From: Macrostomum lignano
Taxonomy: Eukaryota
Reading direction: 5' to 3'
DNA length: 64,000 nucleotides
NCBI GenBank assembly: GCA_002269645.1
Contig: NIVC01000847.1
Location: forward strand, 62,001-126,000
This document shows, in pieces, positions 1,973 through 61,579 of the stretch; the stretch's first letter is position 1, and the number at the start of each line of letters is the position of its first letter. The notes under the pieces are model-generated. The model was given only the letters and a program-made list of their open reading frames with translations, was not told the origin of the DNA and did no database searches. The position numbers were made by a program, and so were the translations under genes.

Positions 1973-2610
1973 AGGTTGCAGCAGCCTGCCACGCGGTTTC
2001 AGGTGGGTTGCAGCAGCCTGCCACAAATTTTCAGGAAGGTTGCAGCAGCCTGCCACAAATTTTCAGGTGGGTTGCAGCAGCCTGCCACAAATTTTCAGGA
2101 AGGTTGCAGCAGCCTGCCACAAATTTTCAGGTGGGTTGCAGCAGCCTGCCACACGATTTCAGGTGGGTTACAGCAGCCTGCCACACGGTTTCAGGTGGGT
2201 TGCAGCAGCCTACCACACGGTTTCAGGTGGGTTGCAGCAGCCTGCCACACGATTTCAGGTGGGTTACAGCAGCCTGCCACATGGTTTCAGTGTGGGTTGC
2301 AGCAGCCTACCACACGGTTTCAGGTGGGTTGCAGCCTACCACACGGTTTCAGGTGGGTTACAGCAGCCTGCCACGCGGTTTCAGTGTGGGTTGCAGCAGC
2401 CTACCGCACGGTTCAGGTGGGTTGCAGCAGCCTACCGCACGGTTTCAGGTGGGTTGCAGCAGCCTACCGCGCGGTTTCAGGTGGGTTGCAGCAGCCTGCC
2501 ACACGGTTTCAGTGTGGGTTGCAGCAGCCTGCCACACGGATTCAGGTGGGTTGCAGCAGCCTGCCACACGGTTTCAGTGTGGGTTGCAGCAGCCTGCCAC
2601 ACGATTTCAC
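1973..2610. repeat. 32-bp minisatellite (GGGTTGCAGCAGCCTGCCACACGGTTTCAGGT), DDX5 intron
   Basis: Direct tandem units, period 32. Confidence 0.95.
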
Positions 2611-3469
2611 GTGGTTTCTGCAAGAGGGCTTTGTCATAAAACTGTTGCAATCGTTTTTCAATAAATAGATAACACTGGCAGATAATACAATCAGTTGTTA
2701 TTGTATCAAACACTGTACGCTCGTATGTATATTGAAGTATAGTACGGCATAATATAAGTATGCAGTATAGGCAATGTCACTCAGGCATACTGGTTGTTGA
2801 CTGTTGCATGCGTGCAGTAGCAGCAGCGTTGGCTGAAGCAGCAAAGAGCAGTCAGCGGCAGCAGAGACAGGGATGCAGGAAAATCCACAGATTGCGGCCG
2901 ATTGAGCGCACGGATGGACTTGGCCGGCGTGTGTTTTTTAATTATCATATTTAAAATCAATTACGGGTCAACCTGCAACTCCTGTCGGCTGCCCTGAGTC
3001 GCTGCTCTTCCCTGCTGTGCTCTGCGCCGACGCCTCCGCCTTGAATCGTCGCTGCCAGCCGTCTAAGCTGTCGCGATGAATAAATAAAACAAGGATGGGG
3101 CCAGTGCAGCACAGCACAGCAGCCGCCTCCAGTGACATTTTTAAATATTGCCATAACGCGTAAGTGTTATTTTTGTGTGCGGCAATATTTTTTTAGTATC
3201 GATTGAAATACTGCTTGTTAAACAATTCTGGCTGGCTATTCTTCCATAGTTAGACGATTTTCGTGTCCGATGGAAGAGCACGCCAGACTGAGCTCGGCTG
3301 TAAAAAATTGTTTAAAGAAAATTAAAATTTAAATAATCCTGTTTTCTAAGAATTATCCTGTCCTGTCAATCTCTAAGATTCGACCATGGTAATGTACTCT
3401 TTAAAAATCGCATATAATTAACCCACCTTTTCTTAGGGATTAATCCTCGATTAATTCTTCTTCATAACA

Positions 3470-4450
3470 ATCATCCTCGATTGATCCCTATTTATAACAA
3501 TCGCCCAAGATGGAACCTCTCTCTAAGAATCGTCTACAATCGATTACTCTCTTGCGGTTGCCCAAGATCAACTCCTATTTCCAAGAATCGTCTATGATCG
3601 ATCCCTCTTTCTAAGAATCGTCCGGAATTGATCCCTCTTTCTAAGAATCGTCAACGATCGATCCCTCTTTCTAAGAATCTTCCATGATCGATCCCTCTTT
3701 CTAAGAATCGTCAACGATCGATCCCTCTTTCTAAGAATCTTCCATGATCGATCCCTCTTTCTAAGAATCTTCCATGATCGATCCCTCTTTCTAAGAATCG
3801 TCCAGGATTGATCCCTCTTTCTAAGAATCGTTAACAATCGATCCCTCTTTCTAAGAATCGTTAACAATCGATCCCTCTTTCTAAGAATCGTCAACGATCG
3901 ATCCCTCTTTCTAAGAATCTTCCATGATCGATCCCTCTTTCTAAGAATCGTCAACGATCGATCCCTCTTTCTAAGAATCTTCCATGATCGATCCCTCTTT
4001 CTAAGAATCTTCCATGATCGATCCCTCTTTCTAAGAATCGTCCAGGATTGATCCCTCTTTCTAAGAATCGTTAACAATCGATCCCTCTTTCTAAGAATCG
4101 TCCAGGATCGATCCCTTTCCTAACAATCATCCTCGATCGATCCCTGTTTTTAACAATCGTCCAAGATGGACACCTCTGTCTAAGTATCGTCTACAATCGA
4201 TTACTCTCTTACAGTTGCCCAAGATCAACTATTTCTAAGAATCGTCCAATATCGATCCCTCTTTCTAAGAATCGTCCATGATCGATACCTCTCTAAGAAT
4301 AGTCCAAGATCTCCTATTTCTAAGAATCGTCCATGATCATTCCTGTTTCTAAGAATCTTCCATGATCGATTCCTATTTCTAAGAATCGCCCAATATCAAC
4401 TCTTATCTTTAGGAACTGCCCGTGATCGATCTCTCTTTCTAAGAATCGCC
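3470..4450. repeat. 30-bp minisatellite (GATCGATCCCTCTTTCTAAGAATCTTCCAT), DDX5 intron
   Basis: Homogeneous core about 3590-4110, degenerate flanks. Confidence 0.95.
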
Positions 4451-4829
4451 CAAGATTCACCCATCAATTCGATAAAGTCCGCTCAAACTGAATCGCAAAG
4501 TTCTTCCATTATGAAGAGACCAATTCAAGCTTGAATGTTTATCTGGACACAAGCTCGTGAAAATTTACGTTTTTAGAATTAGATTAAAAATTTTGACATC
4601 AAAGCGCAATCAATCGTACATGTACATCATTATATTATTTCATCAGTTGCCTGTAGCCGCAATGCAAAGCACTGAATGTACATAGGTATTGCTTATTTTT
4701 AAGCTGTTAGCTTGCCGTTCGTTCTGCGTGTTCCTCTATCGATCGGCACTGATAGCTCACCTTTCTGCTGTCGCTACTCATTCTATTAGCTAGTGTTTAA
4801 CGGTTTAGACGCTAGAGTGTGAAACTAAA

Positions 4830-5215
4830 GCTCTGATCTTGTGAAACTGGAGCTCTGATCTTGTGAAACTGGAGCTCTGATCTTGTGAAACTGAAGCTCT
4901 GTTCTTGTGAAACTGGAGCTCTAATCTTGTGAAACTGACAATCTGATCTTGTGAAACTGAAGCTGTGATCTTGTGAAACTGAAGCTGTGATCTTGTGAAA
5001 CTGAAGCTGTGATCTTGTGAAACTGAAGCTGTGATCTTGTGAAACTGAAGCTGTGATCTTGTGAAACTGAAGCTGTGATCTTGTGAAACTCGAGCTCTGG
5101 TCTTGTGAAACTGAAGCTGTGACCTTGTGAAACTCGAGCTCTGGTCTTGTGAAACTGAAGCTGTGACCTTGTGAAAGTTGAGCTCTGATCTTGTGAAACT
5201 GAATCTCTGATCTTG
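4830..5215. repeat. 22-bp minisatellite (TGTGATCTTGTGAAACTGAAGC), DDX5 intron
   Basis: Direct tandem units, period 22. Confidence 0.95.
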
Positions 5216-5358
5216 TGATGCAGGCCCTGTACCCACTTTTACTCTATTGAATCGCAACGCTCGATAAAAATAATCACTTCAGGGGAATTTTCGCCCGCAC
5301 AAATTGGTATACAATATTTAATAATTCATTAGGCATAACATACTCCCGCTTACCGCAG

Positions 5359-5592
5359 ACATTGACGACATTGCCGCCGTTGTGAACGTCGACTTTCCCA
5401 ACCAGCTGGAGGACTACATTCATCGGATTGGCCGGACAGCTCGCAGTCACAAGAGCGGCACTTCTTATAGTTTTATTACTAATAAGCACATGAAACTGGC
5501 CAAGGAACTGATTAGCATACTGCAGCAGGCCAAGCAGGAGGTTAATCCTAAGCTATTCAATCTCTGTGGCGCTAGTCAGGACTTTATGAGAG
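5359..5592 (+). CDS. DDX5: DDX5/DDX17 helicase exon (motif VI)
   Basis: Acceptor TACCGCAG|AC gives [42 protein letters not shown]...KELISILQQAKQEVNPKL; donor AGAG|GTAATT at 5593, phase 1. Confidence 0.93.
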
Positions 5593-5654
5593 GTAATTGG
5601 AGTTTGCAGTTTTATTTATTGGTATAGTTATCATAACACTTCAGCCCAAATACC

Positions 5655-7195
5655 ATTGTTAGATGTCCTTGATCTTCGTTGTTAGATGTCCTTGATCTTC
5701 ATTGTTAGATGTCCTGATCTTCATTGCTAGATGTCCTTGATCTTCATTGTTAGATGTCCTTGATCTTCATTGCTAGATGTCCTGATCTTCATTGCTAGAT
5801 GTCCTTGATCTTCATTGTTAGATGTCCTTGATCTTCATTGCTAGATGTCCTGATCTTCATTGTTAGATGTCCTTGATCTTCATTGCTAGATGTCCTGATC
5901 TTCATTGTTAGATGTCCTGATCTTCATTGTTAGATGTCCTGATCTTCATTGTTAGATGTCCTTGATCTTCATTGTTAGATGTCCTGATCTTCATTGCTAA
6001 ATGTCCTTGATCTTCATTGTTAGATGTCCTGATCTTCATTGTTAGATGTCCTTGATCTTCATTGTTAGATGTCCTGATCTTCATTGCTAGATGTCCTTGA
6101 TCTTCATTGCTAGATGTCCTTGATCTTCATTGTTAGATGTCCTTGATCTTCATTGTTAGATGTCCTTGATCTTCATTGCTAGATGTCCTTGATCTTCATC
6201 GTTAGATGTCCTTGATCTTCATTGTTAGATGTCCTTGATCTTCATTGCTAGATGTCCTTGATCTTCATTGCTAGATGTCCTTGATCTTCATTGCTAGATG
6301 TCCTTGATCTTCATTGTTAGATGTTCTTGATCTTCATTGCTAGATGTCCTTGATCTTCATTGTTAGATGTCCTTGATCTTCATTGTTAGATGTCCTTGAT
6401 CTTCATTGCTAGATGTCCTTGATCTTCATTGCTAGATGTCCTTGATCTTCATTGCTAGATGTCCTTGATCTTCATTGCTAGATGTCCTTGATCTTCATTG
6501 TTAGATGTCCTTGATCTTCATTGTTAGATGTCCTTGATCTTCATTGCTAGATGTTCTTGATCTTCATTGCTAGATGTCCTTGATCTTCATCGTTAGATGT
6601 CCTTGATCTTCATTGTTGATGTCCTGATCTTCATTGCTAGATGTCCTTGATCTTCATTGTTAGATGTCCTTGATCTTCATCGTTAGATGTTCTTGATTTT
6701 CATTGTTAGATGTCCTTGATCTTCATTGTTAGATGTCCTGATCTTCATTGTTAGATGTCCTTGATCTTCATTGTTAGATGTCCTTGATATTCATTGTTAG
6801 ATGTCCTTGATCTTCATCGTTAGATGTTCTTGATTTTCATTGCTAGATGTCCTTGATCTTCATTGCTAGATGTCCTTGATCTTCATTGTTAGATGTCCTT
6901 GATCTTCATTGCTAGATGTCCTTGATCTTCATTGTTAGATGTCCTTGATCTTCATTGTTAGATGTCCTTGATCTTCATTGTTAGATGTCCTTGATCTTCA
7001 TTGCTAGATGTCCTTGATCTTCATTGTTAGATGTCCTTGATCTTCATTGTTAGATGTCCTTGATCTTCATTGTTAGATGTCCTTGTTCTTCATTACTAGA
7101 TGTCCTTGATCTTCATTGTTAGATGTCCTTGATCTTCATTGTTAGATGTCCTTGATCTTCATTGCTAGATGTCCTTGATCTTCATTGCTAGATAT
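5655..7195. repeat. 23-bp minisatellite (TGTTAGATGTCCTTGATCTTCAT), DDX5 last intron
   Basis: Direct tandem units, period 22-23. Confidence 0.95.
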
Positions 7196-7660
7196 CCTCA
7201 ATCCCATTGCTAGATATCCTCAATCCCATTGCTAGATATCCTCAATCCATTGCTAGATATCCTCAATCCATTGCTAGATATCCTCAATCTCCATTGCTAG
7301 ATATCCTCAATCCCATTGCTAGATATCCTCAATCCATTGCTAGATATCCTCAATCTCCATTACTAGATATCCTCAATCCCATTGCTAGATATCCTCAATC
7401 TCCATTACTAGATATTCTCAATCCCATTACTAGATATCCTCAATCCCATTACTAGATATCCTCAATCTCCATTACTAGATATTCTCAATCCCATTACTAG
7501 ATATTCTCAATCCCATTACTAGATATCCTCAATCCCATTACTAGATATCCTCAATCCCATTGCTAGATATCCTCAATCCCATTACTAGATATCCTCAATC
7601 CCATTGCTAGATATCCTCAATCCCATTACTAGATATCCTCAATCCCATTGCTAGATATCA
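7186..7660. repeat. 21-23-bp minisatellite (ATTGCTAGATATCCTCAATCCC), derivative of the preceding array
   Basis: Abuts the 23-bp array and shares ATTGCTAGATRTCCT. Confidence 0.9.
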
Positions 7661-7714
7661 TTAGTCTTCATTAGCAGATATGATAGCTAATAAATAACAA
7701 TGATAACCTTGCAG

Positions 7715-8199
7715 CTAAGGGTCAGCACGGACGCCGCTACGGAGGAGGCGGTGGTGGTGCCGGAGGCGGCTACGGCGGAGGCTACGGCGGCGCTGCTAAT
7801 CGTTCAGCCGCTCCGCCTGCCGCCGCCGCCGCCGCTCCCGCTGCTGCCGCCGCGCCCTACAGCTACGGCGCCCAGCCAGCCGCCAGCTATTCTAACGGCA
7901 GCGCCGGCGCCGGCTACAACGCCGCTCAGCAGCCGCAGCCTCTGATGCGTGGCCAGGGGGCTTCGGCGCCGTCGGCAAATTCGACAACTTCAGCTGCTGT
8001 AGCCGCCGCCGCTGCCGCTCTAGAGAAGCGCATTAACAATGGCGGCTATCAGCAGCAGCAGCAGCAGAGTATTGGAGCTGCTTTGCCGCAGCCCACGCAG
8101 CCGCAGCATGGCGGAGGCTACCAAGGTTGGAGCGCCGCCGCCGCTGCGAATCCGGCGCCTCAGCAGCCGCAGAACTGGCCTGGTCAGCGTTGGAACTAA
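7715..8199 (+). CDS. DDX5: DDX5/DDX17 helicase last exon, Gly/Tyr/Ala/Gln-rich low-complexity tail
   Basis: Acceptor CCTTGCAG|CT in matching phase 1; reads AKGQHGRRYGGGGGGAGGGYGGGYGG...QQQQQQ...NWPGQRWN*, in frame with ORF 7945-8199; AATAAA at 8493 and 8578. Confidence 0.8.
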
Positions 8200-8492
8200 G
8201 CTGCCCAGTTCGCGGTCCGATCTGATGAAGAGGGGTGGGGGTGTGTGTGTGTGTGTGGACAGCGAAGTTGTCAGCAATACATTTCCGTTTTAATTAACTA
8301 GTGTTATCTCTCCGTGTGTGTATGTGTTTTTCATGTGTTTAAAATCGGCAATGAAGTCCCTATTAGCCCAGTGACTTTGCTGCAGAGTAATAATATAAAG
8401 ATCGGGCGGGAGCTCTTTTTAAAACTATATAAATAAGTTTCACTCTATATATACTACTAATTCTATTTTTAGTTGTCACGTGACGCCCAGCT

Positions 8493-8583
8493 AATAAACG
8501 TTTTATATTAAATATTATATTATAAGTGTCGTCTGTTTATCATGTTCTATTATCTATAATTGTTCTGTTTCTTTTTAAATAAA
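8493..8583 (+). terminator. Candidate poly(A) signals of the DDX5-like gene
   Basis: AATAAA at 8493-8498 and 8578-8583, 300-380 nt after the stop; T-rich tract follows the second. Confidence 0.5.
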
Positions 8584-8585
8584 AA

Positions 8586-8640
8586 ATACTAATTTAGTAC
8601 ATTTTTATGTTTGTTTATTAATCAAGTTTTCCTTGCTTAG
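8586..8640 (+). promoter_or_regulatory. Unpaired 3' splice acceptor (candidate SL trans-splice site) upstream of the Scm-like gene
   Basis: TACTAAT branch-like motif (8587-8593), T-rich tract, TTTTCCTTGCTTAG| ending at 8640; sequence switches from AT-rich to GC-rich at 8641. Confidence 0.45.
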
Positions 8641-8696
8641 GAACTTCTCCTGTCGCCCCAGCCGCCGCCGTCGTCGCCTGCAAGTGTTGCAGTCTT

Positions 8697-8712
8697 ATGT
8701 CAGCAAAACTAG
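8697..8712 (+). CDS. Scm: Scm-like gene, putative first coding micro-exon (MSAKL)
   Basis: ATG TCA GCA AAA CTA G|GTGAAA; phase 1 matches the acceptor at 10590 and gives MSAKL-V-KRLKR without a stop. Alternative start is the in-frame ATG near 10629. Confidence 0.5.
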
Positions 8713-8899
8713 GTGAAACTTTGATAATAACTGAATCTAACAACAATAGTAATAAAATAAAATAATAATATGCGTCAACAACAAGGGAAACAATGATCCG
8801 TTCGTTGTGTAATTTGTGTTCGCCTGTGTCTTCTTTCTGATGCAATCGCCTTTTTATTAGTGTAGCTGGGAATTTGGTTGGCCTTAAGCATTGCTTACT

Positions 8900-10420
8900 G
8901 TGTCTGCGTGCCCTGTCTGTGTGTCTGTCTCCTATCTGTGTGTGTCTGTCCCCTATCTGTGTGTGTCTGTCTCCTATCTGTGTGTGTCTGTCCCTATCTG
9001 TGTGTGTCTGTCTCCTATCTGTGTGTGTCTGTCCCCTATCTGTGTGTGTCTGCGTGCCCTCTCTGTGTGTCTGTCCCTATCTGTGTGTGTCTGTCCCCTA
9101 TCTGTGTGTGTCTGCGTGCCCTCTCTGTGTGTCTGTCTCCTATCTGTGTGTGTCTGTCTCCTATCTGTGTGTGTCTGTCCCCTATCTGTGTGTGTCTGCG
9201 TGCCCTCTCTGTGTGTCTGTCCCTATCTGTGTGTGTCTGTCCCCTATCTGTGTGTGTCTGCGTGCCCTCTCTGTGTGTCTGTCTCCTATCTGTGTGTGTC
9301 TGTCCCCTATCTGTGTGTGTCTGCGTGCCCTCTCTGTGTGTCTGTCCCTATCTGTGTGTGTCTGTCCCCTATCTGTGTGTGTCTGCGTGCCCTCTCTGTG
9401 TGTCTGTCCCTATCTGTGTGTGTCTGTCCCCTATCTGTGTGTGTCTGTCCCCTATCTGTGTGTGTCTGCGTGCCCTCTCTGTGTGTCTGTCTCCTATCTG
9501 TGTGTGTCTGTCCCCTATCTGTGTGTGTCTGCGTGCCCTCTCTGTGTGTCTGTCCCTATCTGTGTGTGTCTGTCCCCTATCTGTGTGTGTCTGCGTGCCC
9601 TCTCTGTGTGTCTGTCTCCTATCTGTGTGTGTCTGTCCCCTATCTGTGTGTGTCTGCGTGCCCTCTCTGTGTGTCTGTCCCTATCTGTGTGTGTCTGTCC
9701 CCTATCTGTGTGTGTCTGTCCCCTATCTGTGTGTGTCTGTCCCCTATCTGTGTGTGTCTGTCCCCTATCTGTGTGTGTCTGTCCCCTATCTGTGTGTGTC
9801 TGTCCCCTATCTGTGTGTGTCTGCGTGCCCTCTCTGTGTGTCTGTCTCCTATCTGTGTGTGTCTGTCCCCTATCTGTGTGTGTCTGCGTGCCCTCTCTGT
9901 GTGTCTGTCCCTATCTGTGTGTGTCTGTCCCCTATCTGTGTGTGTCTGTCCCCTATCTGTGTGTGTCTGTCCCTATCTGTGTGTGTGTCTGTTCTCTATC
10001 TGTGTGTGTCTGTCCCTATCTGTGTGTGTCTGTCCCCTATCTGTGTGTGTCTGTCCCCTATCTGTGTGTGTCTGTCCCTATCTGTGTGTCTGTTCTCTAT
10101 CTGTGTGTGTCTGTTCTCTATCTGTGTGTGTCTGTCCCCTATCTGTGTGTGTCTGTCTCCTATCTGTGTGTGTCTGTCCCCTATCTGTGTGTGTCTGTCC
10201 CCTATCTGTGTGTGTCTGTCCCCTATCTGTGTGTCCCTATTTCTGTGTCTGACTTCTATATCTGTGTCTGTCCCCTATCTCTGTCTGTTTGTACCCTAAA
10301 TCAATGTGTCTGTCCCCTATCTCTGTCTGTCTGTACCCTAAATCAATGTGTCTGTCCCCTAAATCAATGTGTCTGTCCCCTAAATCAATGTGTCTGTCCC
10401 CTATCCCTGTGTATCTGCCC
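8900..10420. repeat. 21-bp minisatellite (CTGTCCCCTATCTGTGTGTGT and variants), Scm intron 1
   Basis: Tandem units; source of the Cys/Val/Leu pseudo-ORFs 8874-10442. Confidence 0.95.
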
Positions 10421-10442
10421 TTCTGATTATAAAAGACTCTAA

Positions 10443-11432
<990 letters not shown>

Positions 11433-11552
11433 TAACATCAAACCCCAGGTTTATTCATTGTCCGGCCATATTAATTTGGCCTTCAATTGAAACATAAGGA
11501 ACTGAGCTTACACGAAATCGCCAACAGCCTCTCATCCACGCCAATCTCTCAG

Positions 11553-12215
11553 TGCCGCCCCTGGGCTACGCCAAGTCCATGAGCACCTGGCCTGCTTTCC
11601 TGGCCCGCATCGAGGCTGCCGGCAACTTCGCCCCGGCCGCCTGTTTCAAGCGGCCACCACCGGCTCCGGCCAGGAACACGTTCGCGCCCGGCCAGCGACT
11701 CGAGGCCGTCGATCGGAAGCATCCGCAGCTGGTCTGTCCGGCCACTGTCCGGGACATCCGGCAGGACCGGTTGCACGTCTCCTTTGACGGCTGGCGCGGC
11801 GCGTTCGATTATTGGTGCCGCTACGATAGTAGGGATATTTTCCCTGTCGGCTGGTGCTCGGCCGCCGGCTATCCGGTGCAGCCGCCCGGCTCCTCCGTCT
11901 CCTATTCGCCAACTACTACTACTAATAATACTACTAGTACAAGTAGTAGTAGTCGATTCCAGTCCAACCGAAACAAAGTCAAACAGGCGTCTGGCGCGTC
12001 CGGCGTCTCCACGGCGTCGCCGTCCGCCTTCTCGGACAGATCCTCGTCCGCTGGCAGTCCGCCGCCGCCGCCGCCGCCGCCTCAGCCGGCGCTGCAGTCC
12101 AATCCCGACAATGACGATGTTTCTATTGTTAATGAGGCGGATCAATCTGTAGCAGTTTCAGCGCACGCACCGGTGTTAGTAACTGAGTCTGAAGAGGATG
12201 CTGCGGAGCCCGATT
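11553..12215 (+). CDS. Scm: Scm-like protein, MBT repeat 2 plus Ser/Thr/Pro-rich linker exon
   Basis: Acceptor TCTCTCAG|TG; PPLGY...WPAFL...GQRLEAVDRKHPQLVCPATV...LHVSFDGWRGAFDYWCRYDSRDIFPVGWC...VQPPG; donor GATT|GTGAGT at 12216, phase 1. Confidence 0.93.
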
Positions 12216-12267
12216 GTGAGTTTTGTATTTATTTTTTCTCTCAAACCACTCGTATTTTGTATTTTTG

Positions 12268-13368
12268 ATCGGTCATTAAGCTTGGCTTCCCTATTGTCAT
12301 TGGGTCCCTCTCATCGGTCATTAAGCTTGGCTTCCCTATTGTCATTGGGTCGGGTCCCTCTAATCGGTCATTAAGCTTGGCTTCCCTATTGTCATTGGGT
12401 CCCTCTCATCGGTCATTAAGCTTGGCTTCCCTATTGTCATTGGGTCCCTCTCATCGGTCATTAAGCTTGGCTTCCCTATTGTCATTGGGTCCCTCTCATC
12501 GGTCATTAAGCTTGGCTTCCCTATTGTCATTGGGTCCCTCTCATCGGTCATTAAGCTTGGCTTCCCTATTGTCATTGGGTCCCTCTCATCGGTCATTAAG
12601 CTTGGCTTCTCTATTGTCATTGGGTCCATGCTTGGGCGCAACCTTGGGATTCACCCGGCCGTTTCTATTGGCAACACACGCATGTAAGTCGCTATTGGCT
12701 GAGAGCAGTCACGTGACTACTGTTCTGTCCAATAGCGACTTACATGCGTGTGTTGCCAATAGAAACGGCCGAGTGAATCCCAAAGTTGCGCATGTATGAT
12801 TGGGTCCCTCTAATCGGTCATTAAGCTTGGCTTCCCTATTGTCATTGGGTCCCTCTCATCGGTCATTAAGCTTGGCTTCCCTATTGTCATTGGGTCCCTC
12901 TAATCGGTCATTAAGCTTGGCTTCCCTATGGTCATTGGGTCCCTCTCATCGGTCATTAAGCTTGGCTTCCCTATTGTCATTGGGTCCCTCTCATCGGTCA
13001 TTAAGCTTGGCTTCTCTATTGTCATTGGGTCCCTCTCATCGGTCATTAAGCTTGGCTTCCCTATTGTCATTGGGTCCCTCTCATCGGTCATTAAGCTTGG
13101 CTTCCCTATTGTCATTGGGTCCCTCTCATCGGTCATTAAGCTTGGCTTCCCTATTGTCATTGGGTCCCTCTCATCGGTCATTAAGCTTGGCTTCCCTATT
13201 GTCATTGGGTCCCTCTAATCGGTCATTAAGCTTGGCTTCCCTATTGTCATTGGGTCCCTCTCATCGGTCATTAAGCTTGGCTTCCCTATTGTCATTGGGT
13301 CCCTCTCATCGGTCATTAAGCTTGGCTTCCCTATTGTCATTGGGTCCCTCTAATCGGTCATTAAGCTC
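12268..13368. repeat. 45-bp minisatellite (TCGGTCATTAAGCTTGGCTTCCCTATTGTCATTGGGTCCCTCTCA), Scm intron 3
   Basis: Highly homogeneous units, interrupted once by the 172-bp MITE. Confidence 0.95.
12627..12798. mobile_element. 172-bp palindromic MITE (hAT-like) inserted in a 45-bp minisatellite
   Basis: About 63-bp inverted arms (12636 onward vs ending 12791) with 2 mismatches; centre AGTCACGTGACT; termini CAT...ATG; 8-bp TSD ATTGGGTC at 12619-12626 and 12799-12806. Confidence 0.85.
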
Positions 13369-13415
13369 AGCTTCCAAGCCACATCATTCCCAAACCTCCC
13401 GGTTGCTTTCCGCAG

Positions 13416-13666
13416 CCGACATGTCCGGCTGGTCCAATGCTGAGGTCAGTCGCGGCCTCCGCTATTGGCGCCTGTCAGAGCTGGCGCCGCTGCTTCAGCG
13501 CCACTCTGTCGACGGCCTGGCGCTTCAATCGCTGACCGCGGACACCCTGGTGCTGGGCATGGGCGCCAGGGTCGGCCCAGCGCTCAAACTGGTCAGCCGA
13601 GTTGAGAGAGCTCGCCGACGCCAGAATCTGTTGCGCTGTCTGCGAGCTCTGCACAGAAATTCCTGA
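13416..13666 (+). CDS. Scm: Scm-like protein, SAM (SPM) domain, last exon
   Basis: Acceptor CTTTCCGCAG|CC in phase 1; DMSGWSNAEV...LLQRHSVDGLALQSLTADTLVLGMGARVGPALKL is a Scm/Ph-type SAM; stop at 13664-13666. Four exons total 1287 nt = 428 aa. Confidence 0.88.
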
Positions 13667-13909: not shown

Positions 13910-14760
13910 GGAAATGTGAGATGGCACATTTCTAGACTGTGAGATGGGACATTTCTAGGCTGTGAGATGGGACATTTCTAGACTGAGGGATGGGACATTT
14001 CTAGACTGTGAGATGGGACATTTCTAGACTGTGAGATGGGACATTTCTAGACTGTGAGATGGGACATTTCTAGACTGTGAGATGGGACATTTCTAGACTG
14101 TGAGATGGGACATTTCTAGACTGTGAGATGGGACATTTCTAGACTGTGAGATGGGACATTTCTAGACTGTGAGATGGGACATTTCTAGACTGTGAGTTGG
14201 GACATTTCTAGACTGTGAGATGGGACATTTCTAGACTGTGAGATGGGACATTTCTAGACTGTGAGATGGGACATTACTAAACTGTGAGATGGGACATTTC
14301 TAGACTGAGATGGGACATTTCTAGACTGTGAGATGGGACATTTCTAGACTGAGGGATGGGACATTTCTAGACTGTGAGATGGGACATTTCTAGACTGTGA
14401 GATGGAACATTACTAAACTGTGAGATGGGACATTTCTAGACTGTGAGATGGAACATTACTAAACTGTGAGATGGGACATTTCTAGACTGTGAGATGGAAC
14501 ATTACTAAACTGTGAGATGGGACATTTCTAGACTGTGAGATGGAACATTTCTAGACTGTGAGATGGAACATTACTAAACTGTGAGATGGGACATTTCTAG
14601 ACTGAGGGATGGGACATTTCTAGACTGAGGGATGGGACATTTCTAGACTGAGGGATGGGACATTTCTAGACTGAGGGATGGGACATTTCTAGACTGTGAG
14701 ATGGGACATTACTAAACTGTGAGATGGGACATTTCTAGACTGAGATGGGACATATCTAGG
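13910..14760. repeat. 23-bp minisatellite (TGTGAGATGGGACATTTCTAGAC)
   Basis: Direct tandem units. Confidence 0.95.
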
Positions 14761-24160: not shown

Positions 24161-24648
24161 AAATCAATAGGAAGTGCTTTGTTGGTACGTAAAAGCCTAA
24201 CCCAGATGAATTCTGCAATCTGAGACCGATTGCTTTTCTCCAAAGCATGTCTATTAGCGTTTCAAATCCAAGTCTGTCCGCTTATCAAACCGGCTTAATT
24301 TAGCTCCACCAGGGAAATTCGGAGCTCACAGCTCATTCGCTCCGAAGCGGCGCATCCTGAGAAGCGCCACCCGGGTAAGATTGCCGTCAGCCACCCTTCT
24401 CTGGACCAATGGCAGCCGGCCTGGCTCAGGGGCTGGGGTGGGAGGCCTGAGCATGGGGTGGGGAGTCCACTGTTGCGTCAAGGTGAGTAGGCAGGAGGGC
24501 GGGTTGGGGGGGGTTTGGCTCCACGAAAGGAGAATAAAAATTGTCGCTTAAAAGTTGCAAAGGGAAAAGAAAGCCTTAGAGAGAGAGAGAGTTTCGCCAG
24601 GACCAGCAAGGCAGCCAGCCAACTCGCTTGTACAGAAGTTCAAATTCA

Positions 24649-25366
24649 ATGGCAGCTACTCAGCAGCAACAGGCGGATGCGACTGATGCGGAACAGGATG
24701 CAGCTGGACTGCTGCCCGACCATCAGTCACCGCAGCAGAAGCCGAGCTCAGCCTCACTTGGCGGCAAACGGGCCGCCCCACAGCATAGCAACAGTCGCAG
24801 CGGCTTCAGCATCAGCAGCATCCTCCGAATGCCGGCCAACAAGCGGCCGAGAGACTCGTCGACTGTTGAGGACGGCGACTCGCCGCCGCCGCCGCCGCCG
24901 CAAGAAGACATACCGCAGTCCCTGCCGCAGCAGCAGCAGCCGCGGCTTCCCTCGCCGGTCTCCATGCCACTGGACCTGAGCGATCCCCGGTCGCATCTGG
25001 CCGCCAGTCTGGCCGCCGCTGCAGCCGCCGCGGCCGCCGGCAGCCAGGGCTTCCCTGTGCTGGCCTTCCCGCCTGGACATCCGCTGCTGCACCAGGCCTA
25101 CTTGGAGATGCAGGCCAAAGCAGCCGCTGCCGCCGCTCTCTGCCAGCCCTGCTGGTTCCCGGGTCCGCAGCCGCAGCATCTGGCAGTTCAGCAGGGTCAC
25201 CAGCTATCGCTGCCTGCGCCGCCTATGCAGCAGCAGCAGCAGCAGCAGCAGGAGCAGCTACCACCGCACAGCACCGCAGCCGCTGCCTTCCTGCGCCACT
25301 GTTTTGCTGAAGCTTCCAGCGGCGGCGGGATGATCTCAGTTAGCGGCAGCGGCCTTGGCAAAATCG
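24649..25366 (+). CDS. Hmx: Hmx/Nkx5 homeobox gene, exon 1
   Basis: ATG at 24649; eh1 Groucho-binding motif FSISSIL (24805-24825); poly-Ala/Gln/Pro tracts; donor ATCG|GTTAGT at 25367, phase 1 matching exon 2. Confidence 0.8.
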
Positions 25367-26504
25367 GTTAGTGAAATTCTCGATTCCTGCACCTTCCCTA
25401 AGAAATCGGTTGCGCAAATTCTCTAATTATTTTTGCTTTTTTTGACTTTGCGAAAGAAAGAAATGAGCTAGCTATAGGATTGCCTCGAGGGCGGGACGAT
25501 TAGCGCATTGCTGCACAACTGTCAGTGGAGTTGTTTGGCTGAGCTGCGAAGTGGCTGCAGTTGACTTCATCAACTGCACCGCCCTAGGGGCGGGGTAGAC
25601 GCGCTGGGGAATAATAGAATGATTCAATTATGCTTGAAATCGCCTCGAGGGATAAATTATAGTTTTAGGAAACTGTCAAGTAGGCATAAACTGTTAATAG
25701 AGGCAACCATAAACAGCAATGAAACACTGCTATAACCGAATATTGCAGGGAAAAAAGTTAGGTTGGTGTGTTTTCAAATTTTTTTCGATTCGTGTCTTCT
25801 CTTTTCCTGTATTTTTTTTCAACTAATTGAAAGACGCCTGGAATTGAGCACGATTACCAAAATGAGCAGTGGGTTAGATGAAAAAACACACCCCCAACTG
25901 GCTCGAAGTTTGCGTGATTCGAATTGCCCTCCTGTCTCAATAATTGAGTTTTCATAAACTCAAACTTCTGTACATTGAGCACAAAGACTCTCTACACACA
26001 AAGAGCGAGTGATCTAAGAGATTAGAATCTGTCTCAGACTCTCAGTTCGTGTTTTGGAGCAGGGCTTGAGCAGCCATTCACCGGAAGCTTAATTCTCTCT
26101 AAGAGTCAAAGTTGTTAATTTGAGCCGACATAAATTTTGTTTCGCTTCCGAAGTCTGTCTCTCTTAAGTCTCACCTCTCGATTCTCACCTGGGGGGGGGG
26201 CTGTCAAAAAAGTGGCTAATCACAGTTCTAAGCAAGCTCCGCCCAGACCCGCCACCGTCAATTAAAAACCTTGACTGACAGACAGAGGGGCTTGGTAGTC
26301 CCAGTCTTGCAAAATTAAGCACAAAGATCTTGTCAGGTTGCAATTGTAAATTTGGAATACAAAACCATCAAAAATTTGGTTCCTTTATGTATACCCTTTT
26401 TTATTAGTTTTGTTAAACTAGCTGCGATGTGTAAACTGTGCAGACTCTGGCACTCTTGCTTAAATTTATTTCCAATCACTTCTTGTCATCCTTTCCAGTT
26501 CTGT

Positions 26505-27108
26505 ACATCTCTATCCATCTGTCATCTGTCTCTATCCATCTGTCATCTGTCTCTATCCATCTGTCATCTGTCTCTATCCATCTGTCATCTGTCTCTATCC
26601 ATCTCTCATCTGTCTCTATCCATCTGTCATCTGTCTCTATCCATCTGTCATCTGTCTCTATCCATCCCTCATCTGTCTCTATCCATCTCTCATCTGTCTC
26701 TATCCATCTGTCATCTGTCTCTATCCATCCCTCATCTGTCTCTATCCATCCCTCATCTGTCTCTATCCATCTGTCATCTGTCTCTATCCATCTGTCATCT
26801 GTCTCTATCCATCTGTCATCTGTCTCTATCCATCTCTCATCTGTCTCTATCCATCTCTCATCTGTCTCTATCCATCTCTCATCTGTCTTTATCCATCTCT
26901 ATCCATCTCTATCCATCTCCTACCCAACTCTATCCATCTCCTATTCATCTCTATCCATCTCCTATCCATCTCTATCCATCTCCTATCCATCTCTATCCAT
27001 CTTTTATTCATCTCTATCCATCTCTTATCCATCTCTATCCATCTCCTATCCATCTCTATCCATATTTTATTCATCTCTATCCATCTCTTATCCATCTCTA
27101 TCCATCTC
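26505..27108. repeat. 21-bp pyrimidine-rich minisatellite (CTGTCTCTATCCATCTGTCAT), Hmx intron
   Basis: Tandem units grading into TCTCTATCCATCTCCTATCCA. Confidence 0.95.
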
Positions 27109-27165
27109 TTACAAGCTGAAAGCGATAGTGAAAGAGAGAAAAATTGTCTAAATTTTAACCAGCAG

Positions 27166-28148
27166 GTCAGCCGCAACAACAGCAGCAGCCGCAGCAGCAG
27201 AACCCGCTCACCACTGGCTACCGGCCCCCAGCTGGCCACCACGGGTCGTCGGCAAAGTCACGTCGTTCGACCAGCTCCGTCGCCGCCGCCGCTGCCGCTG
27301 CAGCTGCCGCTGCCACGGACGCAAACGACGCCTTGGACGGTGTCGGAGCGACGGCGGGGGAGCCGGCGACCGATGCGTCGGACGTGAGCGACCCCATTGG
27401 GCCCGGAGGCGATCATGTCGACGATGAGGATGCCGCTGCGGCGTCCGCGATGCTGGACGACGACGTCGACATGGACGACGAAGACGACGATGGCGTCGGC
27501 GGCGGCGGCGGCCTCGACGACTCAAAAGACGACGATGCCGCCGACTGTCGGGACGGCTCGACGGCCTCCGGCCTGGCGTCGCTGAAGCGGAAGAAGAAGA
27601 CCCGGACGGTGTTCTCCCGGTCGCAGGTGTTCCAGCTCGAGTCCACATTCGACATGAAGCGCTACCTGTCCAGCTCCGAGCGGGCCGGCCTGGCCCACGC
27701 GCTGCAGCTGACGGAGACTCAGGTGAAAATTTGGTTTCAAAACCGGCGCAACAAGTGGAAACGGCAGCTGGCCGCGGAGATCGAAGCGGCCAACTTGGCG
27801 GCGGCGAACCTGGTGGCGGCCAACCGCATGGTCCGCGTGCCCATCCTGTACCACGACCAGAAACCGCAGAGTCCCAACGCTTCAGATGCAGAATCCAACG
27901 CTGGCAGCGCCGCTGGTAACGCCGGCTCCGGTGAAGGTGTCGCCAGCGGCAGCGGCGGCGTTGGCAACGGCGGCAGCGGCGGTGTCAGCAGCGGAGGCAA
28001 CGGCGGTGCCTCCGCCACTAAGGCGGCAACAACGTTTGCCTCGGCGTCCGGCCCGACGTTCTCGGGCCCGTTCCCCAATCCGCTCTACCTGAGCGCCCCC
28101 GGCTTCAGCTCGCCAATGCGGCCTGGCGGACTTCCCGGCATGGTTTGA
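27166..28148 (+). CDS. Hmx: Hmx/Nkx5 homeobox gene, exon 2 (homeodomain about 27588-27767)
   Basis: [60 protein letters not shown] followed by the HMX-specific [10 protein letters not shown] and [10 protein letters not shown] motifs; acceptor TTTTAACCAGCAG| (27163 alternative). Two exons total 566 aa; AATAAA at 28787. Confidence 0.96.
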
Positions 28149-28219
28149 CTGCGTGACTGTTGGCCGGGGCGCCCTTTGACTTGGAGCTTATCGCTTGCTC
28201 GCTACAGCTCTCTGAATGC

Positions 28220-57594: not shown

Positions 57595-58589
57595 GTGGCG
57601 GCAGCGGCGGCAGCTTTCACGCACTTGGCAGCAAATCTGGCGCCGCGACAGTTTCACCAGCGCCAGCAGCAGCAGCCGGCGGCGCCCCAGTTGTAGTCGG
57701 GCTGGCGCCATCCGGGGCGCCGCAGCTGGCTGGCCAGCGCCGGCCTGGCGCCAAGGAGGCCAGCTTCGAGTCGAACGCTTGGCCAGTGGATCCAACCGAG
57801 CTGGTTCGCTCAGTCGAACAGCTGGAATCTCGCGGCAGTACAGATGCCCGAGCTCAAGCTGAGATGCACCTGTGCGGAGCGCTTGTACAGTTGCGCTCGT
57901 GCAAGACTCGCCTACCGCCTATACTGACTGTGAGCCTGGCCTACCTGGCCAAGTCCAGGCCCACCAGCTTCACTCGGCCATTCATATTTGACGGTCTTTG
58001 CTCGTTCCTACGCAAGCGGGATCAGGTGTCCCGGCCGGCCGCTATGCTCTGCGTTGGCTTGTTAACTGCCGCTCTGCGCGACCAGGACGCCTGGCCGGAC
58101 TCAATCCTGCGGGCATTTGTTGAAGACTCGGTTGGCGATAGATTCTGGGTAGATCGGACCGACTGCCGCTGGCTGGTGCGCAATCTGGAGGCTTCGTTTC
58201 CCAATGCCACACCGGCTGATGCTTTGTTCACCTTTGGCGGCACACGAGGCAACGCTACTAAAGAGTTGCCGCAGACGCACACTAGCGTAAGCGTTGCCGC
58301 CACCGCCAGCGACGATGACTCGGCCCAGAGCGGCAGCAGCGGCGTTCAAGATGGCCAGCAGCAGCAACAGCCAGCAATTCAACCGCGCTACGCTAAGAAG
58401 CCGCACTGGCTAGAAGAGCTAGTTGTTGTCTGCGTCAAAGACGCTTTGCAGAAACGCGGCCAGGCTACATCTAGCGAAGCTGCTCAACGGGCCGTCATCC
58501 GGCTGATGACTGTGGCGGCTGGCTATTCAGAGATTCGATTGATGGCTGCCAACCGGTTGGAGATGTGGTTGCAGCTGGCTAAGTTACAG
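57595..58589 (+). CDS. INTS1: Integrator complex subunit 1, first identifiable coding exon
   Basis: Acceptor ATAACATCAG|; GGSFHALGSK, LCGALVQL...SLAYLAKSRP, WPDSILRAFVEDSVGDRFWVDRTDC, RLEMWLQ recall INTS1 N-terminal motifs (GDFIALGSK, LCGAVKQL, WPEIFVKVYIEDSLGERIWVD); donor CAG|GCGAGT. Start-codon exon not securely found. Confidence 0.9.
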
Positions 58590-58639
58590 GCGAGTCTGCG
58601 AGATTTCACCTGCTCGCATTTGGGATTTGTTACACCTGT

Positions 58640-59115
58640 GTTTAACCAGTGGGGTATTGGGATCTGTGCGTATAATCTAGGGTGTATTGGAATATGTAGG
58701 GTGTATTGGGATCTGTGCGTCTAATCTAGGGTGTATTGGAATATGTAGGGTGTATTGGGATCTGTGCGTCTAATCTAGGGTGTATTGGGATCTGTACACC
58801 TGCGTCTAATCTGGGGTATTGAGATCTGTACACATGTGTCTAATCTGGGGTGTATTGGGATCTGTGCACCTGTGTCTAATCTGGAGTGTATTGGGATCTG
58901 TACACCTGTGTCTAATCTGGAGTGTATTGGGATCTGTACACCTGTGTCTAATCTGGGGTGTATTGGGATCTGTACACCTGTGTCTAATCTGGGGTGTATT
59001 GGGATCTGTACACCTGTGTCTAATCTAGGGTGTATTGGGATCTGTACACCTGTGTCTAATCTGGGGTGTGTTGGGATCTGTACACCTGTGTCTAATCTAA
59101 GGTGTATTGGGATCT
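58640..59115. repeat. 36-bp minisatellite (CTGTGTCTAATCTGGGGTGTATTGGGATCTGTACAC), INTS1 GC-AG intron
   Basis: Tandem units; same unit as 61580-62900. Confidence 0.95.
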
Positions 59116-59247
59116 GCACGGTTGTGTCATCAGACATCAGAGTCACGTGAAATGCTAATTGCACATTCTTGTCAAAAGATAAACATTTGAACAAATTATT
59201 TAATTAATTAAAAAATGATAAAACATCTCGAACTGCAATTTATCCAG

Positions 59248-59723
59248 GCCGAAGCCATGGACCTGCTCACAGCTGTCTGCTGCAACTGCACAGCCCTAGC
59301 CGGCTCCCGCGACTGCGAAGTGGTCTCTAGGCTAGTTGACAAGCTGCGCTTCAAATCGCATAAAGCTGTATTCGCGCATTATTTGCAATGCCTTCGTATG
59401 CTGGTGTCAAAGCATCCGGATAATTTGCGCGCGGTGCTGGCTACTGTAGTTGCTAACGAGCTTAGTTCGGGCGTACGCAATCCCAATAATGCAGCCGTAT
59501 TGGTGGCCCTGCACACACACACTAGTAAGGACGCGTGTCGGGCACTGGCTGCGATATTCCGCGATCTGCTTGTACAGGACACCGGGCGGCATCAGCTGCG
59601 TTGCCTGTTGCGCGATCTCTATAGGCATTTGAAGGCCGATATTAGTCTGCCGGCATTTGCCAAGTCGCTACTGCTGCCTCCGGATTCTAGGGTGGCGTCT
59701 CTGCCGTTGGAGCATCGCAGGCA
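59248..59723 (+). CDS. INTS1: INTS1 exon
   Basis: Acceptor TTTATCCAG|GCC; AEAMDLLTAVCCNC...NELSSGVRNPNN...LAAIFRDLL...LLRDL; donor GGCA|GTGAGT, phase 2. Confidence 0.9.
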
Positions 59724-59779
59724 GTGAGTTCTGGAAGAGGCAGAGTAGGCAGTGTAGTTTTTTAAGGCGCAGTTGGTGT

Positions 59780-60720: not shown

Positions 60721-60852
60721 GACAGAGGACAGGTAGATGATATTGTGGTCTGGGTCTGGCGGGTGTTAAGTGCTATTAAGGGCCGTCTCATTCAACTGCT
60801 TAAGATTTTGCTCTGTATTTCAACGTTCAACCCATCCACCGTCGACTCCCAG

Positions 60853-61546: not shown

Positions 61547-61579
61547 GTGCGTGCATTTACTTCTGATTGTGCTGTTGTC

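What the first reader, a model, noticed from the sequence alone, without database searches (positions are those of the whole stretch)
8199..8712. Candidate DDX5-Scm operon resolved by spliced-leader trans-splicing
Seen: the helicase AATAAA (8578) is followed within about 60 nt by a branch-like TACTAAT, a T-rich tract and a strong acceptor TTTTCCTTGCTTAG (8640). A GC-rich 56-nt leader follows, then ATG TCA GCA AAA CTA G|GT, which splices in phase into the Scm MBT exon. There is almost no room for a separate promoter and no obvious donor in the gap. Established: SL trans-splicing and polycistronic transcripts occur in flatworms and nematodes, and nematode intercistronic regions consist of a poly(A) signal, a U-rich element and an acceptor within roughly 100 nt. 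Inference: an RNA helicase and a Polycomb gene are co-transcribed and the Scm mRNA is capped by a spliced leader at 8641.
Basis: partly seen in the sequence, partly recalled or inferred. Interest (0 to 1): 0.7.

Follow-up and report, generated by a model that had tools for sequence, protein, structure and literature searches.

The report
Flatworm helicase–Scm gene spacer, misread exon
The motifs are really there, in the spacer between a DDX5-type helicase gene and a short Scm-like gene of the flatworm Macrostomum lignano, but public transcript-based gene models and paralog comparison put the Scm mRNA start about 1.9 kb further downstream, so this is an ordinary, already annotated gene boundary in a species where trans-splicing and operons are well documented.

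Summary
The window is Macrostomum lignano scaffold NIVC01000847.1 (window position + 62000).

- **Start codon:** the Scm-like coding sequence starts at ATG 10629, not 8697. Older paralogs begin at the homologous Met, and third-position GC jumps from 0.39-0.44 to about 0.70 there.
- **Transcript 5' end:** GenBank transcript-based models for this locus and two 94-97% copies start at 10509 or 10515. They read straight through the proposed acceptor at 10590. No model contains 8641-8712.
- **What sits at those ends:** a cluster of CAG acceptors lies just upstream. TTCCAG|10505 matches the published M. lignano trans-splice motif exactly. A TATAAAAG box lies at 10428.
- **Operon question:** co-transcription with the helicase remains possible. 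After subtracting the 1.5-kb minisatellite the spacer is about 0.2-0.4 kb. An older paralogous locus also has helicase followed by Scm.
- **Limit:** no reads were reachable, so spliced-leader (SL) use and the promoter are undecided.

SL trans-splicing (30% of genes) and operons (15%) are already described genome-wide in this species. Interest is low.

The parts
7715..8199 (+). Last coding exon of the DDX5/DDX17-type DEAD-box helicase. The stop TAA is at 8197-8199. Earlier exons include about 17-226, 523-about 980 and 5359-5592.
   Evidence: ORFs and splice junctions. The annotated helicase CDS is 667 aa and ends at L003 7691, which is window 8199. Pfam finds DEAD and Helicase_C. The best solved-structure matches are DDX17 (8.9e-86) and Dbp2.
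8200..8640 (+). AT-rich helicase 3'UTR with several poly(A)-signal hexamers: AATAAA at 8493 and 8578, ATTAAA at 8507.
   Evidence: Which hexamer is used could not be tested.
8641..8712 (+). It comprises a 56-nt GC-rich island (GC 0.64), ATG 8697 and TCAGCAAAACTAG, followed by donor-like GTGAAA at 8713. It is absent from every public gene model. It is most simply helicase distal 3'UTR or spacer, or possibly a minor 5' exon.
   Evidence: There is one difference among the three copies, G to T at 8712. No annotated protein starts with MSAKL.
8751..8761 (+). Two overlapping AATAAA hexamers (8751 and 8756), followed by a GT-rich stretch at about 8800-8840. This is a possible distal helicase poly(A) site, which would make 8641-8712 plain 3'UTR.
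   Evidence: The sequence is shown; its use as a poly(A) site is inferred.
8911..10425 (+). Minisatellite with a 21-nt unit (TGTGTGTCTGTCCCCTATCTG) and a 146-nt higher-order period, about 72 copies. It fills most of the spacer.
   Evidence: Tandem Repeats Finder.
10428..10435 (+). TATAAAAG, a consensus TATA box about 75-85 nt upstream of the annotated Scm 5' ends. It is conserved in copy L002.
   Evidence: There are only 4 such octamers on the + strand of the 64-kb window. Promoter activity was not tested.
10499..10517 (+). Cluster of CAG acceptors: TTCCAG|10505, CTCAG|10510 and TATCAG|10518. TTCCAG is the only exact [T/C]TNCAG match between 10430 and 10629. This is the candidate spliced-leader acceptor for the Scm-like mRNA.
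   Evidence: The motif comes from PMC8629364. The annotated 5' ends at 10509 and 10515 lie within or just after the cluster. Use as a spliced-leader site is inferred.
10509..10947 (+). First annotated exon of the Scm-like gene (BOX15_Mlig002742g1, PAA76027.1, marked 5'-partial). The conserved start codon is ATG 10629-10631, and the donor is G|GTGAGC at 10948.
   Evidence: N-terminal alignment with paralogs. Third-position GC is 0.44 upstream and 0.71 downstream of 10629.
11553..12215 (+). Scm-like exon 2, carrying the second MBT repeat and a low-complexity linker. The preceding intron, 10948-11552, holds a 17-nt minisatellite.
13416..13666 (+). Scm-like exon 3, carrying a SAM-like C-terminus. 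The stop TGA is at 13664-13666. The preceding intron, 12216-13415, holds a 45-nt minisatellite.

Best explanation
The finding lies in the 2.4-kb spacer between two annotated M. lignano genes. These are a DDX5/DDX17-type helicase (stop at 8199) and a short Scm-like paralog of 410 aa with two MBT repeats and a SAM-like tail.

The Scm-like mRNA does not begin at 8641. Its genome-encoded 5' end lies at about 10505-10515 and its start codon is ATG 10629. The segment 8641-8712 is not part of the main transcript. It is most simply helicase distal 3'UTR or spacer.

Most likely mechanism (inferred, not shown):
1. A short outron is transcribed from the gene's own TATA-box promoter (TATAAAAG at 10428).
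2. The outron is removed by spliced-leader trans-splicing at the TTCCAG/CTCAG acceptors (10504/10509).
3. This also discards the in-frame upstream ATG at 10476.

The gene structure and the start codon are shown. Spliced-leader use and the promoter are inferred.
For: - **Locus identity:** the window equals NIVC01000847.1 at window position + 62000. L003 coordinates + 508 give window coordinates.
- **Annotated 5' ends:** the public CDS starts at window 10509 with [11 protein letters not shown]...[21 protein letters not shown], reading through 10590. The two other copies start 6 nt further down. Three 5' ends within 7 nt argue against random intron retention.
- **Start codon:** paralogs start MSAATATLADIQSDFDW and MRPEMTTLADIQSDFDW, aligned to [14 protein letters not shown] at 10629.
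- **Codon composition:** third-position GC is 0.39-0.44 upstream of 10629 and 0.68-0.73 in the coding exons.
- **Acceptor motif:** TTCCAG|10505 is the only exact [T/C]TNCAG match in 10430-10629 (motif).
- **Promoter signal:** TATAAAAG at 10428 is one of 4 on the + strand of 64 kb.
- **Splice-site style:** all four confirmed acceptors in the two genes are CAG, while 8640 is TAG. The two confirmed Scm donors are GTGAG and 8713 is GTGAA.
- **Pipeline check:** the annotation pipeline resolved the other minisatellite-filled introns of this gene, so it could have found 8712-10591 if that splice were dominant (method).
Against: - No RNA reads, spliced-leader reads, poly(A) tags or transcription-start data could be reached.
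- None of the annotated 5' ends follows an AG exactly, so they are assembly ends rather than spliced-leader-defined boundaries. The models are flagged 5'-partial and may be incomplete.
- The 8640 acceptor is unusually strong, and 8641-8712 is a sharp GC island flanked by AG and GT.
- Among the three copies, 8602-8827 shows 1 change, against about 16 events in 8200-8601. Something there may be functional.
- The TATA box is 75-85 nt from the annotated ends, not about 30 nt.
Confidence: 0.4

Rival explanations
1. True operon with the proximal acceptor. Polymerase reads through the helicase poly(A) sites and the 1.5-kb minisatellite. The Scm-like mRNA is then released by spliced-leader trans-splicing at 10504/10509, or at 10517 or 10590. 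The reader's operon idea would hold, but with a different acceptor and a repeat-inflated spacer.
For: - The two genes are same-strand neighbours with nothing annotated between them.
- The raw gap from the helicase poly(A) signals (8578-8756) to 10505 is 1.7-1.9 kb. Subtracting the 1,515-nt array leaves about 0.2-0.4 kb. That is below the 1-kb repeat-adjusted operon threshold of PMC8629364, which also reports that repeats inflate operon spacers.
- The older paralogous locus L004 keeps helicase followed by Scm on one strand. Its spacer is 1.1 kb with a minisatellite, and a perfect CTACAG acceptor lies 70 nt before the ATG.
- The low cluster number Mlig002742 sits next to multi-gene units such as Mlig002782.g6. 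This hints that the transcriptional unit assembled here is long. That is inference only.
Against: - A consensus TATA box sits just upstream of the 5' end.
- A gap of 0.2-0.4 kb is in the tail of the published distribution, not at the 100-bp mode.
- Retained adjacency after duplication needs no operon.
- The third paralog group (L005, L006) has no helicase within 10 kb.
- Two annelid Scm loci have no helicase neighbour.
- No read evidence was available.
Confidence: 0.3
2. The helicase and Scm are co-transcribed, the spliced leader is added at 8641, exon 8641-8712 splices to 10591, and translation starts at ATG 8697 or further downstream.
For: - All motifs are present.
- The acceptor is strong and is the only one of its class in 8000-11000. 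8713 is the only GTRAR donor in 8190-8900, and the segment is a GC island.
- The 62-nt spacing from poly(A) signal to acceptor fits the roughly 100-bp operon mode.
- The proposed intron would carry a minisatellite, as every other intron of the two genes does.
- 8602-8827 is well conserved among the copies.
Against: - All three public transcript-based models start inside the proposed intron and read through 10590. None contains 8641-8712 or starts with MSAKL.
- The conserved start is ATG 10629, and the proposed extension has non-coding third-position GC.
- The acceptor is TAG rather than the [T/C]TNCAG trans-splice motif.
- The donor lacks +5 G, and it has -1 T in two of the three copies.
- A spliced leader joined at 8641 would open a 24-codon upstream ORF overlapping ATG 8697.
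Confidence: 0.1
3. A plain capped gene. The Scm-like mRNA starts at a conventional transcription start near 10455-10515, driven by the TATA box, with no spliced leader at all.
For: - TATAAAAG at 10428.
- The annotated ends are ragged and not placed after an AG, as expected where the pipeline had no spliced-leader peak.
- About 60-70% of M. lignano genes are not trans-spliced.
Against: - A start about 30 nt after the TATA box would include the in-frame ATG 10476 and add 51 residues of non-coding composition. None of the three models reaches that ATG.
- The three 5' ends cluster right behind a perfect trans-splice motif.
- Genes conserved with human are enriched for trans-splicing, at 45%.
Confidence: 0.12
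4. 8641-8712 is a real first exon with its own capped start at about 8600-8640, or a shared acceptor that is also cis-spliced from helicase exon 5359-5592. The second case would give an in-frame helicase-Scm chimera.
For: - The AT-rich TAAATAAAAAA at 8576 could act as a TATA-like element.
- Joining 5592 to 8641 and 8712 to 10591 gives an open frame...[37 protein letters not shown]....
- Sharing of acceptors between cis- and trans-splicing is common in parasitic flatworms (PMC12582326).
Against: - No annotated isoform of either kind exists.
- Phase compatibility is a 1-in-3 chance.
Confidence: 0.05

Closest known systems
Spliced-leader trans-spliced genes and operons of Macrostomum lignano (Wudarski et al. 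2017, PMC5730564; Ustyantsev and Berezikov 2021, PMC8629364)
   Same: - Same species and same genome assembly.
- Same-strand gene pair.
- The repeat-adjusted spacer is below the published 1-kb operon threshold.
- A perfect [T/C]TNCAG motif lies just before the annotated 5' end.
- A minisatellite inflates the spacer, as the authors describe for operons.
   Different: - Spliced-leader addition to this gene was not shown here.
- The spacer is not at the 100-bp mode.
- A TATA box lies directly upstream.
- Neither gene identifier appears in any searchable paper text.
Caenorhabditis elegans SL2-type operon intercistronic region (poly(A) signal, U-rich element and acceptor within about 100 nt; Blumenthal and Gleason 2003, as cited in PMC8629364)
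   Same: The stretch 8578-8640 reproduces the layout: AATAAA, a T-rich tract, then a strong acceptor 62 nt later.
   Different: - M. lignano has a single spliced leader and no SL2 class.
- The acceptor at 8640 is not joined to the downstream gene in any public model.
Scm / SCMH1 / SCML2 Polycomb-group proteins
   Same: - Two MBT repeats score 148.8 bits.
- Identity to animal Scm proteins is 45-59% over the MBT region.
- The tail is SAM-like.
   Different: - There is no SLED domain and no MYM/FCS zinc finger.
- SAM scores just below the Pfam cut-off, 22.1 against 23 bits.
- The protein is 410 aa, against 590-740 aa for typical family members.
- It looks like a shortened Macrostomum-specific paralog. 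The longer paralog P0003 keeps SLED and SAM.
DDX5 / DDX17 / yeast Dbp2 DEAD-box helicases
   Same: - The best solved-structure matches are DDX17 (8.9e-86) and Dbp2 (8.2e-73).
- DEAD and Helicase_C domains are present.
- The C-terminal tail is Gly/Tyr- and Gln-rich.
   Different: The N-terminal part of the gene lies outside the window and was not examined.

Membership tests
M. lignano spliced-leader-resolved operon (criteria of PMC8629364) | Adjacent genes on the same strand with no opposite-strand gene between them | tested here: met
   The helicase CDS ends at 8199 and the Scm-like CDS starts at 10509 (or 10629), both on the + strand. Nothing is annotated between them.
M. lignano spliced-leader-resolved operon (criteria of PMC8629364) | Repeat-adjusted intergenic distance below 1 kb | tested here: met
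   The distance from about 8600-8780 to 10505 is 1.7-1.9 kb. Subtracting the 1,515-nt array at 8911-10425 leaves about 0.2-0.4 kb. The exact transcript ends are unknown.
M. lignano spliced-leader-resolved operon (criteria of PMC8629364) | The downstream gene's mRNA carries the 35-nt spliced leader | not testable with these tools
   No M. lignano transcript contigs were found. Spliced proteins cannot be looked up. The stored supplement lacks these genes. The annotated 5' ends do not sit exactly after an AG.
M. lignano spliced-leader-resolved operon (criteria of PMC8629364) | A single precursor transcript spanning both genes | not testable with these tools
   The only evidence is indirect: the naming hint that Mlig002742 is a long transcriptional unit.
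   Three transcript-derived GenBank models start at 10509 or 10515 and read through 10590. No model includes 8641-8712.
   Paralog N-termini align to ATG 10629. Third-position GC of the extension is 0.39, against 0.68-0.73 in the coding exons.
   Site 8640 reads GCTTAG. The exact matches lie at 10504, 8385 and 8692.
Scm/SCMH1 Polycomb family | Two MBT repeats, a SLED domain and a C-terminal SAM (SPM) domain | tested here: inconclusive
   The two MBT repeats are met at 148.8 bits. SAM_1 scores 22.1 bits, just under the 23-bit cut-off. SLED is not detected. The paralog P0003 has all three.
DDX5/DDX17/Dbp2 subfamily | A DEAD-box core most similar to DDX5/DDX17/Dbp2 | tested here: met
   Best matches are DDX17 at 8.9e-86 and Dbp2 at 8.2e-73, with DDX3X next at 9.3e-56. 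Pfam finds DEAD and Helicase_C.

The most novel reading that the evidence does not exclude
8641-8712 could be a genuine minor exon whose acceptor is shared between spliced-leader trans-splicing and cis-splicing from the helicase. The path would be 5592 to 8641, then 8712 to 10591, and it is in frame. The locus would then produce, besides two separate mRNAs, a helicase-core-MBT chimeric protein that physically links an RNA helicase to a Polycomb reader. The helicase-Scm linkage has been kept in two diverged paralogous loci.
Probability: 0.04. Interest if true: 0.45.

Novelty: already known. Interest (0 to 1): 0.15.

Why it matters
It matters little beyond annotation.
- Spliced-leader trans-splicing and operons have already been catalogued genome-wide in M. 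lignano, and this locus is already annotated in GenBank.
- If the helicase and the Scm-like gene were shown to be co-transcribed, it would add one more two-gene operon to about ten thousand operon genes. There would be a modest twist: the pairing survives in two paralogous loci.
- The practical value here is a corrected gene model: start codon at 10629, a 410-aa product, and a 5' end near 10505-10515. The GenBank CDS is a 5'-partial artefact of an open upstream frame.
- It is also a caution. A textbook operon spacer motif can appear in a 3'UTR without being used by the neighbouring gene.

Tried and rejected
1. **Transcript contigs.** I looked for transcript-derived contigs of either gene, to read a spliced leader or a poly(A) end directly.
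   - Protein searches with the Scm N-terminus and the helicase C-terminus returned no M. lignano transcript proteins.
2. **Literature by gene identifier.** No paper text holds Mlig002742 or Mlig030406.
   - The stored, truncated expression table of PMC5816591 carries TRANSSPLICED flags but does not include these genes or any SCMH1/DDX5 entry.
   - PMC8629364 has no stored supplements.
3. **Gene-name suffixes.** I first read 'g1/g2' as positions within an operon. This is wrong: Mlig030406g1 and g2 are the same gene on two scaffolds.
4. **Spacer homology.** I searched for homology between this spacer and the spacer of paralog locus L004. Only 9-14-nt chance matches turned up, including ATGTCAGCA at both 8697 and the L004 start codon (E about 9).
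5. **Deeper synteny.** Two annelid Scm loci have no helicase neighbour.
6. **Window scans.** There is no spliced-leader RNA gene and no Rfam family in the window.
7. **Coordinate correction.** I first placed the conserved ATG at 10630. It is at 10629-10631.

Full report
**Identity of the sequence**

[quoted passage not shown] One of them is PAA76027.1 (BOX15_Mlig002742g1, P0121). It lies on NIVC01000847.1 of assembly GCA_002269645.1 (Mlig_3_7). Locus L003 from that record matches the window with a constant offset of 508 at every motif compared. So window position p equals record position 62000 + p.

The upstream gene is a DEAD-box helicase (Pfam DEAD and Helicase_C). Its closest solved relatives are DDX17 and yeast Dbp2. 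The downstream gene has two MBT repeats and a SAM-like tail. It resembles animal Scm, SCMH1 and SCML2.

**The observation**

Every element is at the stated coordinate:
- helicase stop at 8197-8199;
- AATAAA at 8578;
- TACTAAT at 8587;
- TTTTCCTTGCTTAG ending at 8640;
- a 56-nt GC-rich stretch at 8641-8696, with GC 0.64 against 0.25 before and 0.34 after;
- ATG at 8697;
- donor GT at 8713.

Joining 8712 to 10591 stays in frame with the MBT exon.

The acceptor is strong. Only 45 sites with at least 11 of 12 pyrimidines before AG exist on the + strand of the window, and 8640 is the only one in 8000-11000. Site 8713 is the only GTRAR donor in 8190-8900.

Even so, with 50 AATAAA hexamers on the strand and 0.7 such acceptors per kb, one poly(A)-signal-plus-acceptor pairing in the window is expected by chance. 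The donor, the phase and the in-frame ATG add little. Its statistical weight is modest.

**Where the coding sequence starts**

Two older M. lignano paralogs are about 70% identical over the MBT region. They begin MSAATATLADIQSDFDW and MRPEMTTLADIQSDFDW. These align to [14 protein letters not shown], encoded from ATG 10629-10631.

Third-position GC points the same way:

| Segment | Third-position GC |
|---|---|
| Three Scm coding exons | 0.68-0.73 |
| Helicase last exon | 0.66 |
| Open frame 10443-10628 | 0.44 |

The start codon is therefore 10629 and the product is 410 aa. The in-phase ATG at 8697 is best read as coincidence.

**Where the transcript starts**

The Mlig_3_7 annotation was built from RNA-seq with StringTie, TACO and a de novo assembly. 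Gene boundaries were cut at mapped spliced-leader and poly(A) signals where such data existed (PMC5730564).

At this locus the annotated CDS is 5'-partial. Two other genomic copies are 94-97% identical (L001 and L002). Their models start 6 nt further down.

The same pipeline correctly spliced the two other minisatellite-filled introns of this gene. No protein beginning MSAKL exists in the cluster.

None of these ends follows an AG exactly, so they are assembly ends rather than spliced-leader-defined ends. They do fall within 7 nt of each other. They also fall inside or just behind a cluster of CAG acceptors: TTCCAG|10505, CTCAG|10510 and TATCAG|10518. TTCCAG is the only exact match in 10430-10629 to the published trans-splice acceptor motif [T/C]TNCAG. 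A consensus TATAAAAG sits at 10428, one of four on this strand in 64 kb.

**Is the pair an operon?**

M. lignano has one 35-nt spliced leader. About 30% of its genes are trans-spliced and about 15% are in operons. The repeat-adjusted intercistronic mode is near 100 bp and the operon threshold is 1 kb. The authors note that repeats inflate operon spacers (PMC8629364).

Points in favour of an operon:
- The spacer from the helicase poly(A) signals (AATAAA at 8493, 8578, 8751 and 8756; ATTAAA at 8507) to 10505 is 1.7-1.9 kb.
- Of that spacer, 1,515 nt is one minisatellite at 8911-10425. The adjusted distance of about 0.2-0.4 kb would pass the published criterion if the downstream gene is trans-spliced.
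- The older paralogous locus L004 also has a helicase directly upstream of its Scm paralog on the same strand. That helicase is 73-88% identical to this one. The spacer there is 1.1 kb with a minisatellite, and a perfect CTACAG acceptor lies 70 nt before the ATG.

Points against an operon:
- The third paralog group has no helicase within 10 kb.
- Two annelid Scm loci have no helicase neighbour.
- Retained adjacency after duplication does not require co-transcription.
- The TATA box argues for an own promoter.

I could not reach any reads. The operon question therefore stays open.

My estimates:

| Model | Probability |
|---|---|
| Proximal spliced-leader site fed by the gene's own promoter | 0.4 |
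| Proximal spliced-leader site fed by helicase read-through (operon) | 0.3 |
| Capped start without spliced leader | 0.12 |
| Independent start at, or cis-splicing into, 8641 | 0.05 |

**What 8641-8712 may be**

The simplest reading is helicase distal 3'UTR or spacer. Two AATAAA hexamers at 8751 and 8756 are followed by a GT-rich stretch at about 8800-8840.

Two things keep a minor-exon reading alive. First, the sharp GC island lies between a strong AG and a GT. Second, the three copies differ by about 16 events in 8200-8601 but by only one in 8602-8827. That one change is G to T at the donor -1 position, in both other copies.

A spliced leader joined at 8641 would open a 24-codon upstream ORF overlapping ATG 8697.

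**Comparison with what is known, and verdict**

The layout at 8578-8640 looks like a nematode-type intercistronic region. It fails the test that matters, which is use by the downstream mRNA. The species has no SL2 class.

The locus as a whole fits the known M. lignano picture of trans-spliced genes and repeat-inflated operon spacers. It is already annotated, so novelty is nil to slight.

The useful outputs are a corrected gene model and a clear, cheap test: map spliced-leader reads at record positions 70641 versus 72505-72518.

Noticed in passing
window 1974-2614, 3465-4456, 4818-5218, 5654-7672, 8911-10425, 10962-11406, 12268-13375, 13915-14759: Every intron of both genes, the spacer between them, and the region after the Scm stop each carry a different minisatellite. 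Units are 17-45 nt and arrays run up to 2 kb. ORF listings suggest many more arrays across the rest of the window, for example around 21-22, 26-27, 29-31.6, 35-38.4, 41.7-44.3, 48-51.4 and 58.8-63.8 kb.
   Followed up: partly
window 8602-8827, compared with L001 and L002: Among the three near-identical genomic copies this 226-nt stretch shows a single difference, at 8712. The helicase 3'UTR just upstream (8200-8601) shows about 16 substitution or indel events. The conserved block spans the candidate exon and 115 nt beyond it. No explanation was established.
   Followed up: partly
window 5359-5592, 8641-8712 and 10591-10947: Skipping the helicase's last exon and joining 5592 to 8641, then 8712 to 10591, would give an uninterrupted helicase-Scm reading frame. 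This is a 1-in-3 coincidence by phase, and no transcript evidence exists for it.
   Followed up: partly
window 10629-13666; paralogs P0003 (L004) and P0004 (L005, L006): The Scm-like gene here is a shortened paralog of 410 aa with no SLED domain. It is present in three 94-97% identical copies on scaffolds NIVC01000846, NIVC01000847 and NIVC01000848. Longer paralogs of 671-722 aa keep SLED and/or SAM. The GenBank CDS of all three short copies is a 5'-partial read-through of an open upstream frame.
   Followed up: yes
L004 1-19015: The older paralogous locus has three same-strand genes in a row: helicase, Scm and a Ras-family GTPase. The spacers are 1.1 and 1.3 kb. It is another candidate polycistronic cluster.
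   Followed up: no
window about 24600-28150 (+): There is a homeobox gene here (Pfam Homeodomain 1.2e-21 in ORF 27333-28148). From memory, the homeodomain sequence resembles the HMX/NK5 class. The class was not tested.
   Followed up: partly
window about 57786-61600 (+): Exons of an Integrator complex subunit 1 (INTS1) homolog lie here (Pfam INTS1_RP2B-bd, 3.4e-22 and 3.7e-11). They are interleaved with minisatellites.
   Followed up: partly
UniRef A0A1I8IN40 (P0123): An older gene prediction for this Scm-like gene is frame-shifted at its start ([12 protein letters not shown]..., which is 10630 onward in the wrong frame). The source names it 'Doublecortin domain-containing protein', which looks like a mis-annotation.
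   Followed up: no
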